DNA of 64,000 nt from Macrostomum lignano (GCA_002269645.1 NIVC01001256.1:124001-188000), one strand, 5' to 3'. Shown: positions 7,117-23,977, counted from the first letter of the stretch. Numbers and translations: made by a program. The notes: generated from the letters alone by a model not told the origin.

Positions 7117-10100
7117 ATGCAGCAGCAGCAGCTTCATCTTAACCAGATGCCGGCGCACAAGGCTGACGGCGCTGCTGCTGACACCGGCGCCGCAGCCAAG
7201 CACCGCTGCCGGCACGCCAGAGTAAGAGTAGCAGCCCTGACTCTCCCGCCAGAGTAAGAGTAGCAGCCCTGACTCTCCCGCCAGAGTAAGAGTAGCAGCC
7301 CTGACTCTCCCGCCAGAGTAAGAGTAGCAGCCCTGACTCTCTGCCAGAGTAAGAGTAGCAGCCCTGGCTCTCCCGCCAGAGTAAGAGTAGCAGCCCTGAC
7401 TCTCCCGCCAGAGTAAGAGTAGCAGCCCTGACTCTCTGCCAGAGTAAGAGTAGCACCCCTGACCCTCTGCCAGAGTAAGAGTAGCACCCCTGACCCCTGA
7501 CCCGTGATTGGTTTGTTGTCGGGCGAGAAATGTGCAGCAATTCTGGACTCGAATCTCTACTCGGACTGGGGAGAATGTGGCTTGTAGAAAAATTCTAATA
7601 GAGCGCCTGCGACATTTGCCTTCTTTCTATCACCCTGCAGCTTGTCTGTCTGACTGCCCTCTTGCCCGCTTCTGTTGCTGCTCGTCCCCCCCCCCCGGGT
7701 AGCTCCTCCAAGCCGTCACTCTTGCCGGGCTCCATTCCCGGCTAAATTACCTCCTGTTTGTCCAAGTGACAGCTCAGCAAACTGAATGGCTGGTGGAGGC
7801 GGCGTTCAATGATAGCCCCGGATGCCAAAACTGACAGAGACAGACAGACAGACAGACAGACAGACAGACAGACAGACAGACAGACAGACAGACAGACAGA
7901 CAGACAGACAGACAGACAGACAGACAGACAGACAGACAGACAGACAGACAGACAGACAGACAGACAGACAGACAGACAGACAGACAGACAGACAGATAGA
8001 TTCCCCGGTTAGCAAATCGAGGCTAATAATTCGAGCTAGGCCTAGCAAAGCGCTGGCAGCAGATTTCTTCCTTCACTTTTCTCTTCAATTCTCATTGCCG
8101 GGTCGTGGCCGATTGTCGCCCAGACATGGGGAAGGCGGGGGGCTGCAGCCAGTTTTCAGGAACTCAAACACACCCTGGTGAAACTTGAAGAGCAGCGCAA
8201 ACAAGTGAATTTCAGTTTGCGCCGCTCTTCAAGTTTCACGCGCCAGCATGAGAGGCTCGCTAATAAAATTTAAATGCATGCAAAGTGAGAAGTGCAGGGT
8301 CTCTTAGATGTCTCCGTGGATACTCAGGCTAAGCTGAGTAGCCAGAATTTGCTCAGCATGCATGCGCAGACCTGCTTCTAACCTGAGAGCTTTTGCTCTC
8401 AATAAACCGATACGAGTTTTGGGGCTTATCGCGACAACAACTGACCTTTAGTGACCTCTAGCGACCCTCATCAAAGCTTGACCTCAACTGACCTCCCCAC
8501 CCCCGCCACCAAAGGACGCCGGCTACCACGCCGTTGACACGGACGACGACTGCCAGTCCAACGCCAGCGGCGAGTTCAACTCCACCGAGTTCCTCAACGC
8601 CCGCGACGAGCCGGAGGACCCCCAGCTGCTCCAGCAGCAGCTGCAGCAGCCGCACTACCGCCGTCAGCCAGCGCCGGCGCAGGCGGCCTGTCGCGGACTG
8701 CGGAACCGCGGCCTCCTCCGCGCTGCCTCCTCGTCGGCGGCCACCGCCGAGGCCGCACTGTCCGACCGCGACGCCGTGGTGACGACATCCTTGTCGGAGC
8801 GGGCCGGGCTGTCCGGACTCTGCACTGCCACCATCGGCACCGTGGACCCCGGGCCGGTGTCTCTGGACCCCACGCAGCGGCTCATCGACGCGCTGGAGAC
8901 TCTGCGGGACTCCATCAACGACAGCACCAGCGTGGCGCTGCAGCAGAGCCGCGTGCGCAACCGGCGCCGGGGCACCTCAGCCGGCCAGGTCAACTACAAG
9001 GGCGGCGGCCTCAAGAACGACGAGCGCTGCCGCATCCGGGCTGAGAAGGTGTGGAGGGGGTCGAGACCTTGATAATCTGAATCACTTCCTCTCCTGCCCA
9101 TCTCCTCTCCTGCTCACCTCCTCTCCTGCTCACCTCCTCTCCTGCTCACCTCCTCTTCTGCTCACCTCCTCTCCTGCTCACCTGCTATCCTGCTCACCTT
9201 CTCTCCTGCTCACCTCCTCTCCTGCTCACCTGCTATCCTGCTCACCTCCTCTCCTGCTCACCTCCTCTCCTGCTCACCACCTCTCCTGCTCACCACCTCT
9301 CCTGCTCACCACCTCTCCTGCTCACCTCCTCTCCTGCCCACTTCCTCTCCTGCTCACTCTCCTGCTCACTTCCTCTCCTGCTCACCTCCTCTCCTGCTAA
9401 CCTCCTTTCCTTCTCACCTCCTCTTCTGCTCACCTCCTCTCCTGCTCACCTGCTATCCTGCTCACCTTCTCTCCTGCTCACCTCCTCTCCTGCTCACCTG
9501 CTATCCTGCTCACCTCCTCTCCTGCTCACCTGCTATCCTGCTCACCTTCTCTCCTGCTCACTTCCTCTCCTGCCCATCTCCTCTCCTGCTCACCTCCTCT
9601 CCTGCTCACCTCCTCTCCTGCTCACCTCCTCTTCTGCTCACCTCCTCTCCTGCTCACCTGCTATCCTGCTCACCTTCTCTCCTGCTCACCTCCTCTCCTG
9701 CTCACCTGCTATCCTGCTCACCTCCTCTCCTGCTCACCTGCTATCCTGCTCACCTTCTCTCCTGCTCACCTCCTCTCCTGCTCACCTGCTATCCTGCTCA
9801 CCTCCTCTCCTGCTCACCTCCTCTCCTGCTCACCACCTCTCCTGCTCACCACCTCTCCTGCTCACCACCTCTCCTGCTCACCTCCTCTCCTGCCCACTTC
9901 CTCTCCTGCTCACTCTCCTGCTCACTTCCTCTCCTGCTCACCTCCTCTCCTGCTAACCTCCTTTCCTTCTCACCTCCTCTCCTGCTCACTTCCTCTCCTG
10001 CTCACCTCCTCTCCTGCTCACTTCCTCTCCTGCTCACCTCCTCTCCTGCTCACCTCCTCTCCTGCTCACCTCCTCTCCTGCTCACCTCCTCTCCTGCTCA

Positions 10101-22100: not shown

Positions 22101-23977
22101 GAATCCTGAGCAATGTACACTAGTGCGCAGTCTGGATGTACACCTATTGTGCGAATCCTGGGCAATGTACACTAGTGCGCAGTCTGGATGTACACCTATT
22201 GTGCGAATCCTGGGCAATGTACACTAGTGCGCAGTCTGGATGTACACCTATTGTGCGAATCCTGGGCAATGTACACTAGTGCGCAGTCTGGATGTACACC
22301 TATTGTGCGAATCCTGAGCAATGTACACTAGTGCGCAGTCTGGGTGTACACCTATTGTGCGAATCCTGAGCAATGTACACTAGTGCGCAGTCTGGATGTA
22401 CACCTATTGTGCGAATCCTGGGCAATGTACACTAGTGCGCAGTCTGGGTGTACACCTATTGTGCGAATCCTGAGCAATGTACACTAGTGCGCAGTCTCAA
22501 AAAATCTTATACGTTAGGATAAACTCTTCTCCACTGAGCTGGTGATTCCAACGGAGTAGCGACAGCCGGGGTCACAAATTCAGTTTGACAGCTCGGCAGG
22601 CTGCATGTCAGTGGCTTGAGTGGCTCAGGGAAGCCACTCTACTTTGATTGCTGTTGTACAAATCGCTTTTATCGAATTAAAAACGTCATAATGAGTTTCT
22701 GGCGACAGAAAATCCCGCGTGCCTGCCTTTGTTCTCCGAAAAATCAAGTCGCCCTGAGGCAAGCGGCATCCCCAGCCTCCCGCATGTTGCACCAATCCAT
22801 AATTAATAAACATAATTTTCCTTAGGCTGAAACCCCTGGGGCTCCATCTGGCCCAATCCTCTTCAATTCCTGCAGCAAGCAGCATCTTCACCACCCACTC
22901 GCCCCACCCCATTCACCCTCTTCAGGCGTGTCGAAGGCGGCGGGAGATGAGGAAGAAGGACCGGGAGTACAAGGTGCGTTGCCACCTGGCGGTTCGAGAC
23001 TGCGCTGCCGGGCCGCAAAGCCAAGGCAGTCCTCACAGCCTCGTCTCTACCCTCTGTCTACTCATCTCTACGCCCTGTCTACTCGTCTCTACCCCCTGTC
23101 TACTCATCTCTACCCCCTGTCTACTCGTCTCTACCCCCGGTCTACTCGTCTCTACCCCCTGTCTACTCGTCTCTACCCCCTGTCTACTCGTCTCTACCCC
23201 CTGTCTACTCGTCTCTACCCTCTGTCTACTCATCTCTACCCCCTGTCTACTCGTCTCTACCCCCTGTCTACTCGTCTCTACCCCCTGTCTACTCGTCTCT
23301 ACCCCCTGTCTACTCGTCTCTACCCCCTGTCTACTCGTCTCTACCCCCTGTCTACTCATCTCTACTCCACTGTCTACTCATCTCTACTCCACTGTCTACT
23401 CATCTCTACCCCCTGTCTACTCATCTCTGTTCCGCTGTCTACTCATCTCTATTCCGCTGTCTACTCATCTCTACTCCGCTGTCTACTCATCTCTACTCCG
23501 CCGATTTCTTTCCTAGTTCTAAAATTGCATTTACTAATTAAAGAAATTTTCAAATTCATTACTACTCGTAAGCTTATGGTACTGGAATTCCGCATGTTCG
23601 CACCTGTAACAAGCCTCTCTAGGCTGTAGTGCTAGGATTTCTGCATACGCTCGCACTGTAGCAGTGCCACAAAGCATGCTGTTTGGCTCTCAGGGCTCGG
23701 TCTGATTTTTCATCTTAGACAGACACCACAGCAAGGAGAGGATAGTATCCAAAATTACTGTAGACCTAGATTTCGTGGTTTGCCCTGCCTCAGATGCACT
23801 AGTCTACTCACTGCATCCCTACTGACAATCCACTCCAACTCACCGCTGCCCCTCTCCCCACCTCTGCCTGCTCCGCCTCGCCAGGAGTGGCTCAATAAAA
23901 AGAAAGAGTGGCACAAGAAGGCGCTTGAGATTGCCAACGCCCGGAGGACGTCCACGGTGCTGGTGCATGCTGTGTAG
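7117..23977 (+). CDS. Cys-less (Pro-loop) pentameric ligand-gated ion channel subunit, about 614 aa, spliced
   Basis: Exons 7117-7221, 8515-9048, 11271-11399, 14016-14216, 14580-14837, [18452-18607 or 18647-18802], 21083-21403, 22926-22973, 23885-23977. All are AG/GT bounded and join in frame. Motifs: [41 protein letters not shown] (Pro-loop without Cys), [12 protein letters not shown] (M1), RL.LSFTL.LT (M2), LP.ISYLT, M3, M4. The true 5' end is uncertain because an acceptor at 7090-7091 precedes the ATG. Confidence 0.9.
7217..7503 (+). repeat. 31-32-bp minisatellite containing the exon-1 splice donor (9 copies)
   Basis: agagtaagag at 7219, 7251, 7283, 7315, 7346, 7378, 7410, 7441, 7472. Confidence 0.95.
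7833..7999. repeat. (GACA)n
   Basis: Direct reading. Confidence 0.98.
8178..8239. other. Near-perfect 25-bp inverted repeat (hairpin, 12-nt loop) in channel intron 1
   Basis: gtgaaacttgaagagcagcgcaaac (8178-8202) versus gtttgcgccgctcttcaagtttcac (8215-8239): 24/25 complementary. Confidence 0.9.
9085..10200. repeat. 16-bp minisatellite tgctcacctcctctcc
   Basis: Period 16. Confidence 0.95.
11496..12258. repeat. (GACA)n with cactaa interruptions
   Basis: Direct reading. Confidence 0.97.
12690..13640. repeat. 9-bp polypyrimidine repeat cctctccct
   Basis: Direct reading. Confidence 0.95.
14250..14551. repeat. 21-bp minisatellite cagtctagtagatgccacagc
   Basis: Period 21. Confidence 0.93.
14881..16130. 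repeat. Two adjacent 22-bp minisatellites (gggtgggctgtccgattcactg, then gagtcgggtgcctgtcacattt with recurring variant blocks)
   Basis: Direct reading. Confidence 0.93.
16872..18295 (+). repeat. 15-bp G-rich minisatellite gggcgggtatgtgct (about 95 copies)
   Basis: Homogeneous 5' part, variant units toward the 3' end. Confidence 0.98.
18452..18607 (+). CDS. Pore exon copy A: [52 protein letters not shown]
   Basis: tttcag| acceptor, |gtgagt donor, 156 nt, phase 0-0. Confidence 0.9.
18647..18802 (+). CDS. Pore exon copy B: [52 protein letters not shown]
   Basis: cgccag| acceptor, |gtaagg donor, 156 nt, phase 0-0; 38/52 aa identical to copy A. Confidence 0.9.
19030..19380. repeat. (CCAG)n then (GACA)n
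   Basis: Direct reading. Confidence 0.95.
20230..20860. repeat. 16-bp minisatellite gtgataagagtcggga
   Basis: Period 16. Confidence 0.96.
21431..22498. repeat. 52-bp minisatellite (about 20 copies)
   Basis: cctgggcaatgtacactagtgcgcagtctggatgtacacctattgtgcgaat. Confidence 0.97.
23040..23500. repeat. 21-bp minisatellite ctactcgtctctaccccctgt
   Basis: Period 21. Confidence 0.93.

What the first reader, a model, noticed from the sequence alone, without database searches (positions are those of the whole stretch)
7117..23977. Possible inverted membrane topology of the Cys-less channel
Seen: no hydrophobic signal peptide in the roughly 213-aa low-complexity N-terminus. The Cys-loop disulfide is absent. 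The M3-M4 loop (normally cytosolic) holds an NQT sequon and a Cys pair ([12 protein letters not shown]). The 47-aa tail after M4 (normally short and extracellular) has 16 K/R, starting [10 protein letters not shown], and includes a PKA-type RRTS. Established: the positive-inside rule, and disulfides do not form in the cytosol. Inference: the ligand-binding-like domain may face the cytoplasm, giving an intracellularly gated or organellar pLGIC. Against: three N-x-S/T sequons in exon 2, and an upstream signal-peptide exon could have been missed.
Basis: inference. Interest (0 to 1): 0.7.

Follow-up and report, generated by a model that had tools for sequence, protein, structure and literature searches.

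The report
Possibly upside-down flatworm ligand-gated channel
This flatworm gene encodes a known "Cys-less" relative of neurotransmitter-gated channels, and its sorting signals, shared by about 170 relatives, suggest the protein sits upside-down in the membrane with its ligand-binding domain inside the cell, which no experiment has yet tested.

Summary
The window is Macrostomum lignano DNA. Positions 8515-23977 (+) hold eight phase-0 coding exons, plus one alternative M2 exon, of a pentameric ligand-gated channel subunit. It belongs to the published lophotrochozoan "Cys-less Pro-loop" clade.

Its first exon (7117-7221) has no support. At a 93-97% identical second locus in the M. lignano assembly, the annotated start exon lies at a position that maps about 3.7 kb upstream of the window. 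That exon encodes no signal peptide either.

- About 170 relatives lack an N-terminal hydrophobic segment (median score 0.9, against 2.5 for GABA-A controls).
- The motif (K/R)RRRxMxxKDxEY follows M4 across phyla.
- Lys+Arg counts favour the ligand-binding side, 11.1 against 4.2. In controls the counts are 3.0 against 10.4.
- RR(T/Q)S in the tail is conserved in annelid and nemertean orthologues.
- The ligand-binding domain has no conserved sequon or Cys pair.
- The long M3-M4 loops of parasitic flatworms carry sequons conserved in position.

I found no paper proposing this topology. It remains a computed inference (about 0.6). The family is known; the orientation would be new.

The parts
7117..7221 (+). 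Probably not part of the coding sequence.
   Evidence: It is in frame, but no homologue supports it. Its donor lies in the first unit of the 32-nt minisatellite 7215-7494. The equivalent stretch lies inside intron 1 of the annotated model at the second locus.
8515..9048 (+). Exon 2. It encodes a disordered, charged N-terminal extension (DTDDDC, three non-conserved sequons). It also encodes the N-terminal alpha-helix [28 protein letters not shown] (8863-8946) and the linker to beta1.
   Evidence: AG/GT splice sites, phase 0. 96% identical to P0001. In the AF2 model residues 1-110 have pLDDT below 50 and residues 119-148 form a helix with pLDDT about 90.
11271..11399 (+). Exon 3: beta1-beta2 of the ligand-binding domain ([20 protein letters not shown]...).
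   Evidence: the KIGEIDT..E positions are at least 90% conserved in 121 sequences.
14016..14216 (+). Exon 4: the WNPxxxxxN motif and the Pro-loop ([15 protein letters not shown]). E276 replaces the first Cys-loop cysteine.
   Evidence: alignment to GABA-A gamma2.
14580..14837 (+). Exon 5. L290 replaces the second Cys-loop cysteine. The exon also encodes beta7-beta10, the pre-M1 motif CRAARRPG (14784-14807) and the start of M1.
   Evidence: C357 is present in 99% of relatives.
18452..18607 (+). Exon 6a: end of M1, the M1-M2 loop GADKPE, the pore helix M2 and the M2-M3 loop [11 protein letters not shown].
   Evidence: 100% conserved at the second locus.
18647..18802 (+). Exon 6b: a tandem copy of exon 6a, 73% identical as protein and only 39 nt downstream. 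Presumed to be mutually exclusive with 6a, giving an alternative pore helix ([13 protein letters not shown]...).
   Evidence: P0001 uses 6b. The Owenia orthologue also has two tandem M2 exons.
21083..21403 (+). Exon 7: M3 (21086-21154), a 60-aa M3-M4 loop with NQT (21191-21199) and the Cys pair (21251-21286), and M4 (21335-21400).
22926..22973 (+). Exon 8: the polybasic segment just after M4, [16 protein letters not shown].
   Evidence: the motif (K/R)RRRxMxxKDxEY is conserved across flatworms, annelids, nemerteans, molluscs, a brachiopod and rotifers.
23885..23977 (+). Exon 9: the helical C-terminal tail [30 protein letters not shown], with RRTS at 23942-23953.
   Evidence: Orthologous tails in Owenia, Lineus, Capitella, Paralvinella and Ridgeia carry SRR(T/Q)ST..LLHxVHx. 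The e8-e9 junction is used in Macrostomum models P0045 and P0058.
24847..25084 (+). An alternative last exon that annotated Macrostomum models read in two different frames: P0001 (DPVLPDGG...) and P0058 (NKIQFYQMVESHGRGAN).

Best explanation
The locus encodes a subunit of the Cys-less (Pro-loop) pentameric ligand-gated ion channel clade of Spiralia.

Shown:
- The fold is the standard one: an N-terminal helix, a beta-sandwich ligand-binding domain, then M1-M4.
- The Cys-loop disulfide is absent.
- Two tandem exons encode alternative pore helices.

Inferred: the signals that orient the protein in the membrane point to an N-in/C-in orientation.
- There is no signal peptide. The long hydrophilic N-terminus and the ligand-binding domain would therefore be made and folded in the cytosol.
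- M1 has a strongly positive N-side flank and would act as a type-II signal anchor.
- M4 would end in the cytosol, held there by the conserved polybasic stretch.
- The ligand-binding domain, the M2-M3 loop and the 47-aa helical tail would then be cytoplasmic. Only the 6-aa M1-M2 loop and the M3-M4 loop would be exposed outside the cell or in a lumen.

Speculative: the channel would be gated or modulated from the cytoplasmic side by a ligand still unknown. It would be regulated through the conserved RR(T/Q)S site and through binding of anionic lipids to the juxtamembrane KRRR. The membrane it resides in is unknown.
For: Identity:
- Pfam Neur_chan_LBD scores 31.9 bits against a cut-off of 26.
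- The best solved relatives are GABA-A gamma2 (3.5e-15) and ELIC (6.7e-15).
- The AF2 model has mean pLDDT 74, and its Foldseek top hits are GABA-A and glycine receptors.
- It is 96% identical to M. lignano P0001 and 56-62% identical to annelid and nemertean orthologues.
- The clade is described in PMC4795631 and PMC9874803.

Topology:
1. The maximum 10-residue Kyte-Doolittle mean in the region before beta1 has a median of 0.90 (n=92; 4 sequences reach 2.0). In more distant representatives it is 0.83 (n=79; 1 reaches 2.0). In GABA-A gamma subunits with intact N-termini it is 2.49 (n=23). The family's own TM helices score 2.6-2.95.
2. The start sequences are conserved and hydrophilic: MNFSRSML (Macrostomum), MLFSRIAL (Lineus), MSINFNKLF (trematodes), MAINFNKLF (cestodes). 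One cDNA contig has an in-frame stop upstream of a hydrophilic start.
3. N-terminal extensions run from 30 to over 600 residues. That is too long and too charged to cross a membrane without a signal.
4. Mean K+R counts (n=84) are 3.24 before M1, 1.68 in the M2-M3 loop and 6.15 in the 15 aa after M4. They are 1.64 in the M1-M2 loop and 2.60 in the M3-M4 loop. That gives 11.1 on the ligand-binding side against 4.2 on the other (81 of 84 sequences). Controls give 3.0 against 10.4.
5. Net charge of the M1 flanks is +3.2 on the N side and +0.8 on the C side, in 99 of 101 sequences.
6. The SRR(T/Q)ST motif in the tail is conserved in 7 close orthologues from three phyla (the window protein included), and similar sites occur in paralogues.
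7. The ligand-binding domain has no conserved sequon (0.22 per domain, against 2.2 in controls), and its only conserved Cys is a single one, C357.
8. In the long M3-M4 loops of four parasitic-flatworm groups, the count of alignment columns where at least 75% of sequences carry a pattern is 6 for N-x-S/T. It is 0 for the reversed pattern S/T-x-N, for Q-x-S/T and for N-x-A/G. A Cys pair is conserved between Macrostomum and one trematode group.
9. AF2 predicts one continuous helix, residues 495-578, covering the pre-M4 segment, M4 and the whole tail.
Against: - No topology was measured, and no dedicated predictor (SignalP, DeepTMHMM, TOPCONS) could be run. My measures are simple hydrophobicity and charge counts.
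- The sequences are related, so the counts are not independent.
- This gene's start codon lies outside the window and is taken from the annotation of the second locus.
- A few relatives have hydrophobic N-termini. P0016, P0026, P0111 and P0202 may be mis-predicted models. In P0008, a polyadenylated cDNA, the first AUG adds 43 hydrophobic residues from AT-rich sequence ahead of the conserved MISSRSLL. This was not resolved.
- Gene calls from the Logan and JGI sources use GTG starts, so their N-termini are unreliable.
- Across all long loops the reversed pattern S/T-x-N is as frequent as N-x-S/T (78 each). Only conservation of position favours glycosylation.
- A pre-M1 Arg cluster also occurs in classical receptors.
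- No member of this superfamily has ever been shown in this orientation.
- Sequons in the ligand-binding domain are fewer than shuffling predicts (18 against 76.5). Sequence constraint can explain that, but so could selection against glycosylation in a lumen.
Confidence: 0.6

Rival explanations
1. The topology is conventional: the ligand-binding domain faces outside or into a lumen, and the M3-M4 loop is cytoplasmic. The signal peptide would then be encoded by a 5' exon that annotation misses systematically, or the protein would use an unrecognised targeting route. The basic helical tail after M4 would lie outside and pack against the acidic ligand-binding domain.
For: - Every characterised member of the superfamily has this orientation (established knowledge).
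- Signal peptides often sit in small first exons that gene predictors miss.
- The start exon of this very gene lies outside the window.
- One cDNA (L003) could start at an upstream AUG that adds a hydrophobic segment.
- Classical receptors also have pre-M1 arginines.
- Sequons are rarer in the ligand-binding domain than shuffling predicts.
- The long M3-M4 loops of parasitic flatworms are rich in K/R (10-18 residues), like a classical intracellular domain.
Against: - The conserved N-termini start with Met, are hydrophilic and agree across independent annotations from several phyla.
- One complete ORF has an in-frame stop upstream of its start.
- Six K/R within 15 residues after M4, conserved across phyla, would break the positive-inside rule.
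- A conserved RRxS site would have no kinase outside the cell.
- There are no conserved sequons or disulfides in a supposedly secreted domain.
- In most members the M3-M4 'intracellular domain' is only 11-16 aa.
Confidence: 0.3
2. The copy in this window is a redundant or non-expressed duplicate, or its protein no longer forms a channel. Its unusual features would then carry no functional meaning.
For: M. lignano carries near-identical duplicated loci: L001 is 93-97% identical to the window. The start exon is not in the window. No function has been measured for any member of the clade (PMC9874803).
Against: - All exons e2-e9 are intact with canonical splice sites and phase 0.
- The exon peptides compared (e6a, e6b, e8, e9) are 100% identical at the second locus, against 93-97% nucleotide identity across the locus.
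- The protein is 56-62% identical across phyla, and the pore, the Pro-loop and the M2-M3 coupling motifs are conserved.
- RNAi of planarian homologues gives behavioural phenotypes, according to PMC9874803.
Confidence: 0.05

Closest known systems
Cys-less Pro-loop receptors of Lophotrochozoa and Platyhelminthes (Jaiteh et al. 2016, PMC4795631; the schistosome 'Cys-less' LGIC clade of Johnson et al. 2023, PMC9874803; planarian gabrg-like genes)
   Same: It belongs to this clade. Schistosome, cestode, annelid, nemertean, mollusc and rotifer proteins are direct homologues at E of 1e-92 or below. It has FPxD without the flanking cysteines, no second Cys-loop, and Glu at M2 position -2'.
   Different: It does not differ as a protein. 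What is added here is the family-wide lack of a signal peptide, the polybasic motif after M4, the reversed charge bias and the tandem M2 exons. The two papers read here do not discuss any of these.
GABA-A and glycine receptor subunits (classical anionic Cys-loop receptors)
   Same: They are the best sequence and structure matches: gamma2 at 3.5e-15, and Foldseek matches to beta3 and GlyR at E of about 1e-18. The M2-M3 loop [12 protein letters not shown] resembles SLPKVSYVTAMD, and Arg at 0' is shared.
   Different: The classical subunits have a cleavable signal peptide (score about 2.5) and the Cys-loop disulfide. They average about 2 sequons per extracellular domain, have an 80-110 aa K/R-rich M3-M4 loop and no tail after M4. 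The window protein is the reverse on each of these points. It also has E-A or E-Y at -2'/-1' where these have P-A.
ELIC and GLIC (bacterial pLGICs)
   Same: They also lack the Cys-loop and have a short M3-M4 loop. ELIC matches at 6.7e-15. [quoted passage not shown]
   Different: The bacterial channels export their ligand-binding domain to the periplasm by means of a signal peptide (established knowledge). They have no long N-terminal extension and no long basic tail after M4.
Presenilin versus signal peptide peptidase, as a precedent for related membrane proteins with opposite orientation
   Same: It is only an analogy. Related polytopic cores are inserted in opposite orientations (PMC2647162 turned up; its text was not read).
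   Different: The protein family is unrelated, and its orientation was shown by experiment. Here the orientation is only inferred.

Membership tests
Pentameric ligand-gated ion channel (Pro-loop) superfamily | A beta-sandwich Neur_chan_LBD domain followed by four transmembrane helices | tested here: met
   Pfam PF02931 scores 31.9 bits against a cut-off of 26. PF02932 scores 19.8 bits, below its cut-off of 28.1. AF2 predicts 10 strands and helices M1-M4 at pLDDT of about 85-97. Foldseek gives probability 1.00 against GABA-A and GlyR chains.
Pentameric ligand-gated ion channel (Pro-loop) superfamily | The conserved Pro-loop motif (F/Y)PxD in the beta6-beta7 loop, and an M2-M3 coupling loop | tested here: met
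   FPLD is present at the position that aligns with FPMD of gamma2. [12 protein letters not shown] aligns with SLPKVSYVTAMD.
Pentameric ligand-gated ion channel (Pro-loop) superfamily | Assembly into a pentamer and ion conduction | not testable with these tools
   Only a monomer could be modelled. No functional data exist for the clade (PMC9874803).
Cys-loop receptors in the strict sense (metazoan neurotransmitter receptors) | A disulfide between two cysteines 13 residues apart flanking the beta6-beta7 loop | tested here: not met
   E276 and L290 occupy the two Cys positions. The first-loop cysteines are also absent from the clade, as reported in PMC9874803.
Cys-loop receptors in the strict sense (metazoan neurotransmitter receptors) | A cleavable N-terminal signal peptide and an extracellular, N-glycosylated ligand-binding domain | tested here: not met
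   No hydrophobic N-terminal segment was found in the window protein, in P0001's start exon or in about 170 relatives. No sequon is conserved in the ligand-binding domain. The test is a hydrophobicity scan, not SignalP.
Lophotrochozoan Cys-less Pro-loop clade | Closest homologues are the Cys-less sequences of flatworms, annelids and molluscs; no cysteines in the first loop; no second Cys-loop; an acidic residue at M2 -1' or -2' | tested here: met
   Hits to Schistosoma, Echinococcus, Capitella, Owenia and Lineus proteins have E-values from 1e-140 to 1e-175. GADKPEAR and EPHKCEYR place Glu at -2'. No Cys pair lies before M1.

The most novel reading that the evidence does not exclude
A whole, ancient spiralian clade of pentameric ligand-gated channels (at least 225 representative sequences at E of 1e-30 or below) is inserted upside-down. 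Its 'extracellular' ligand-binding domain, its N-terminal extension and its helical tail after M4 sit in the cytoplasm, and only a short or glycosylated M3-M4 loop is exposed outside. These would be the first pLGICs gated from inside the cell, for example by a second messenger, a metabolite, Ca2+ or pH. They may act in flatworm mechanosensory neurons. Alternative M2 exons would tune the pore.
Probability: 0.55. Interest if true: 0.9.

Novelty: new variant of a known kind. Interest (0 to 1): 0.74.

Why it matters
All pentameric ligand-gated channels characterised so far sense ligands outside the cell or in the periplasm. A clade whose ligand-binding domain faces the cytoplasm would have several consequences.
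- It would be a new way of using this fold, comparable to channels gated by cyclic nucleotides or IP3.
- It would explain why these 'orphan' Cys-less receptors have no known agonist.
- It would redirect the search for ligands to inside-out patches and cytosolic compounds.
- It would change how the schistosome and tapeworm members are judged as drug targets. The pocket would be intracellular and the glycosylated loop would be the exposed part.

The prediction can be tested directly with standard topology assays.

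Tried and rejected
- Start exon. I searched the window for the start exon of the second locus with tblastn (word size 2) and found nothing. It lies beyond the window's 5' end. An early note of mine that it was out of frame was wrong; it is in frame.
- Control set. The control search returned many N-terminally truncated 'isoform X' models. Only the 23 sequences with an intact N-terminus were used for the signal-peptide yardstick, and 12 for the charge counts.
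- cDNA starts. Contigs from Logan were meant to prove complete N-termini. One did (L004). One is ambiguous because of an upstream AUG (L003). One has no in-frame ATG because the gene caller used GTG (L005).
- Sequon enrichment in long M3-M4 loops. Against shuffles it looks clear (95 against 53.9). In the full set the reversed pattern is just as frequent (78 each). In the non-redundant set N-x-S/T leads (27, against 13 reversed and 11.4 expected). I therefore rely only on the position-conservation test.
- Sequon shortage in the ligand-binding domain. I considered it as evidence and set it aside as uninformative, because sequence constraint alone can produce it.
- A disulfide between the pre-M1 Cys and the post-M4 Cys. 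Rejected as a general feature: C357 is present in 99% of sequences, while the post-M4 Cys is present in 26%.
- The locus of Lineus P0007 could not be fetched.
- The 150 best representatives appear to be spiralian only; the six sampled clusters that carry a name or accession are all spiralian. I therefore could not ask whether deuterostome or protist Cys-less relatives share the traits.
- Three literature searches for an inverted, intracellular or signal-peptide-less pLGIC found nothing relevant.

Full report
**What is in the window.** The window is a GC-rich animal sequence full of micro- and minisatellites. On the + strand I rebuilt a gene model from AG/GT splice sites in which every exon is phase 0:
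- e2 8515-9048
- e3 11271-11399
- e4 14016-14216
- e5 14580-14837
- e6a 18452-18607, or e6b 18647-18802
- e7 21083-21403
- e8 22926-22973
- e9 23885-23977 (stop codon)

The 579-aa product matches Pfam Neur_chan_LBD above its cut-off. It is 96% identical to Macrostomum lignano BOX15_Mlig010629g1 (P0001), so the window comes from this free-living flatworm. The best matches among solved structures are GABA-A gamma2 (3.5e-15) and ELIC (6.7e-15). An AlphaFold2 model built on 121 homologues gives the standard fold with mean pLDDT 74: an N-terminal helix, a beta-sandwich and M1-M4. Its Foldseek top hits are GABA-A and glycine receptors.

**Checking the observation.**
- E276 and L290 replace the two Cys-loop cysteines.
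- NQT and [12 protein letters not shown] lie in a 60-aa M3-M4 loop.
- The tail after M4 is 47 aa with 16 K/R. It begins [12 protein letters not shown] and contains RRTS.

- It is in frame but has no homologue.
- Its donor is the first unit of a 32-nt minisatellite.
- At a second M. lignano locus, L001, which is 93-97% identical to the window, the equivalent stretch is intronic.
- The annotated start exon at L001 encodes MNFSRSMLAYGKTPKRSGSGYGRPKRQLPTSTSYY and ends in TAT|gtaagt. It lies 13.5 kb upstream of exon 2, which maps to about 3.7 kb before the window begins. tblastn does not find it in the window.

But the missed exon is hydrophilic (maximum 10-residue Kyte-Doolittle mean 0.13). For comparison, a C-type lectin ORF in the same window (40587-41336) has a plain signal peptide that scores 2.72.

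[quoted passage not shown] Johnson et al. described the same clade as the 'Cys-less' ligand-gated channels of schistosomes (PMC9874803). Johnson et al. note three things:
- Planarian homologues are expressed in mechanosensory neurons.
- RNAi of those homologues gives behavioural phenotypes.
- The ligand and the ion selectivity are unknown.

Homologues with E of 1e-92 or below come from flatworms, annelids, nemerteans, molluscs, a brachiopod and rotifers. An exhaustive phmmer scan of 1.84 billion representative proteins finds 225 at E of 1e-30 or below. The sampled distant hits that carry a name are leech and gastropod proteins. The two papers on this clade that I read do not discuss signal peptides or membrane orientation. 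Three full-text searches for an inverted, intracellular or signal-peptide-less pLGIC found nothing relevant.

**Testing the topology inference against relatives.** I asked whether each trait is a family trait, and I calibrated each measure on classical GABA-A gamma subunits fetched for that purpose.

1. *Signal peptide.*
   - The maximum 10-residue hydrophobicity before beta1 has a median of 0.90 in 92 relatives; 4 reach 2.0.
   - In 79 more distant representatives the median is 0.83; 1 reaches 2.0.
   - In 23 gamma subunits with intact N-termini the median is 2.49.
   - The family's own TM helices score 2.6-2.95.
   - The N-termini are conserved between species yet hydrophilic: MNFSRSML, MLFSRIAL, MSINFNKLF, MAINFNKLF. 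This argues that they are real starts.
   - One cDNA contig (L004) has an in-frame stop upstream of a hydrophilic start.

2. *N-terminal load.* The region before the ligand-binding domain is 30 to over 600 residues long, charged and predicted to be disordered. By established knowledge of membrane insertion, N-terminal segments that cross the membrane without a signal peptide are short. A long charged extension followed by a folding beta-sandwich should stay in the cytosol.

3. *Positive-inside rule.*
   - On the ligand-binding side, mean K+R counts are 3.24 before M1, 1.68 in the M2-M3 loop and 6.15 in the 15 residues after M4.
   - On the other side they are 1.64 in the M1-M2 loop and 2.60 in the M3-M4 loop.
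   - The totals are 11.1 against 4.2, in that direction in 81 of 84 sequences.
   - The controls are the mirror image, 3.0 against 10.4.
   - Net charge of the M1 flanks is +3.2 on the N side and +0.8 on the C side, in 99 of 101 sequences. This is what a type-II signal anchor looks like.
   - The motif (K/R)RRRxMxxKDxEY directly after M4 is conserved across phyla.

4. *The tail.*
   - The direct orthologues in Owenia, Lineus, Capitella, Paralvinella and Ridgeia share EFLxKKKEWxEK...SRR(T/Q)ST.LLHxVHx with the window's exon 9.
   - The Owenia gene has matching tail exons.
   - A conserved basophilic-kinase site makes sense only in the cytosol.
   - AF2 predicts a single helix, residues 495-578, through the pre-M4 segment, M4 and the whole tail.

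5. *Marks of the secretory pathway.*
   - The ligand-binding domain has no sequon present in 15% or more of relatives. It averages 0.22 per domain, against 2.2 in controls.
   - Its only conserved cysteine is the single C357 before M1.
   - In parasitic flatworms the loop is 100-210 residues long. There, N-x-S/T is the pattern most often conserved in position: 6 alignment columns carry it in at least 75% of sequences. The count is 0 for S/T-x-N, Q-x-S/T and N-x-A/G, and 2 each for D-x-S/T and S/T-x-S/T.
   - One trematode group keeps a C-x7-C pair where Macrostomum has C-x9-C.

This pattern, with glycosylation-type marks in the loop that is classically cytoplasmic and none in the domain that is classically extracellular, is the opposite of that of classical receptors.

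**Caveats.**
- These are simple counts, not dedicated predictors, and the sequences are related.
- Five relatives have hydrophobic N-termini. Four of them (P0016, P0026, P0111, P0202) may be model errors.
- The fifth, P0008, is a polyadenylated cDNA (L003). Its first AUG would add 43 hydrophobic residues, encoded by AT-rich sequence, in front of the conserved MISSRSLL. I could not resolve this case.
- Gene calls from the Logan and JGI sources use GTG starts and are unreliable at the N-terminus.
- Sequon enrichment in the loops is clear against shuffles (95 against 53.9). But in the full set the reversed pattern is just as frequent (78 each), and only the non-redundant set separates them (27 against 13).
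- The shortage of sequons in the ligand-binding domain (18 against 76.5 expected) is probably due to sequence constraint, and I do not count it either way.
- Pre-M1 arginines also occur in classical receptors.
- The start exon of this particular copy is inferred from the second locus.

**Most likely mechanism.**
- Shown: the protein is a standard pLGIC subunit without the Cys-loop disulfide. Its pore-lining M2 is encoded by two tandem alternative exons.
- Inferred, at about 0.6: the protein inserts N-in/C-in. The ligand-binding domain, the M2-M3 loop and the basic helical tail are then cytoplasmic, and the M1-M2 and M3-M4 loops are exoplasmic. The pore end with Glu at -2' would then face outwards.
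- Speculative: gating or modulation by a cytosolic ligand, control by phosphorylation at RRTS, and binding of anionic lipids by the juxtamembrane KRRR.

The main rival, at about 0.3, is conventional topology with an unrecognised targeting signal. A dead or silent duplicate is unlikely (0.05), because all exons are intact and the protein is 56-62% identical across phyla.

**Novelty and verdict.** The gene and its clade are known. The proposed orientation, the family-wide signals that support it and the tandem M2 exons are not in the literature I could search. If the orientation is real, this is a new variant of a known kind and would be surprising to specialists. It is cheap to test with tag accessibility, glycosylation mapping and protease protection. 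Interest 0.74.

Noticed in passing
window 18452-18607 and 18647-18802; L002 48710-48865 and 49072-49227: The exon that encodes the end of M1, the pore helix M2 and the M2-M3 loop is duplicated in tandem. The copies are 73% identical as protein, both 156 nt and phase 0, and only 39 nt apart in Macrostomum, which suggests mutually exclusive splicing. The annelid Owenia orthologue also has two tandem copies, 206 nt apart. P0001 uses 6b. The UniProt model P0003 wrongly strings both together. The copies differ at the pore positions -1', 2' and near 16'-19'.
   Followed up: partly
window 24847-25084: An alternative 3' exon is read in two frames by different annotated Macrostomum models. P0001 skips exon 9 and reads DPVLPDGG.... 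P0045 and P0058 use a donor inside exon 9, after RRTSTVL, and read NKIQFYQMVESHGRGAN. The window copy has a frame shift relative to P0001 near 25000-25034. So the gene seems to have several alternative C-termini.
   Followed up: partly
window 7215-24568 (introns): Almost every intron carries a large tandem array: (AGAC)n at 7838-8000, 11496-12257 and 19028-19379; a 16-mer x70 at 9082-10197; a 9-mer x105 at 12691-13637; a 15-mer x94 at 16878-18294; a 52-mer x20 at 21430-22497; and others. Together they make up a large share of the gene's length.
   Followed up: no
L001 (NIVC01001548.1) compared with the whole window: A second M. lignano locus is collinear with window positions 892-36622 at 93-97% identity. 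The exon peptides compared (e6a, e6b, e8, e9) are 100% identical as protein. Array lengths differ between the two loci. This fits the duplicated genome of this species.
   Followed up: partly
window 27649-28584 (+): An intronless 311-aa ORF matches Pfam Galactosyl_T (PF01762, 1.3e-41). It is probably a GT31 beta-1,3-glycosyltransferase gene downstream of the channel gene.
   Followed up: partly
window 40587-41336 (+): A 249-aa ORF has a clear N-terminal signal peptide (MRCELAVAILILSS...) and a C-type lectin domain (PF00059, 3.6e-06). I used it as a positive control for signal peptides from the same genome.
   Followed up: partly
window 50879-51769 (-), 33101-34183 (+): One ORF fragment has a weak Cupin_8 (JmjC-like) match (27.5 bits against a cut-off of 27.4) and is interrupted by a (GACA)n array. 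Two adjacent ORFs look like remnants of a retroelement but have no Pfam hit.
   Followed up: no
L003 205-333 (cDNA of an annelid-like orthologue, ERR6338309): In this polyadenylated transcript the first in-frame AUG lies 43 codons upstream of the conserved start MISSRSLL. It would add a hydrophobic segment encoded by AT-rich sequence (…KFFIIYIRFATFIFFVP). If it is translated, it could act as a signal anchor and give that protein the conventional orientation.
   Followed up: partly
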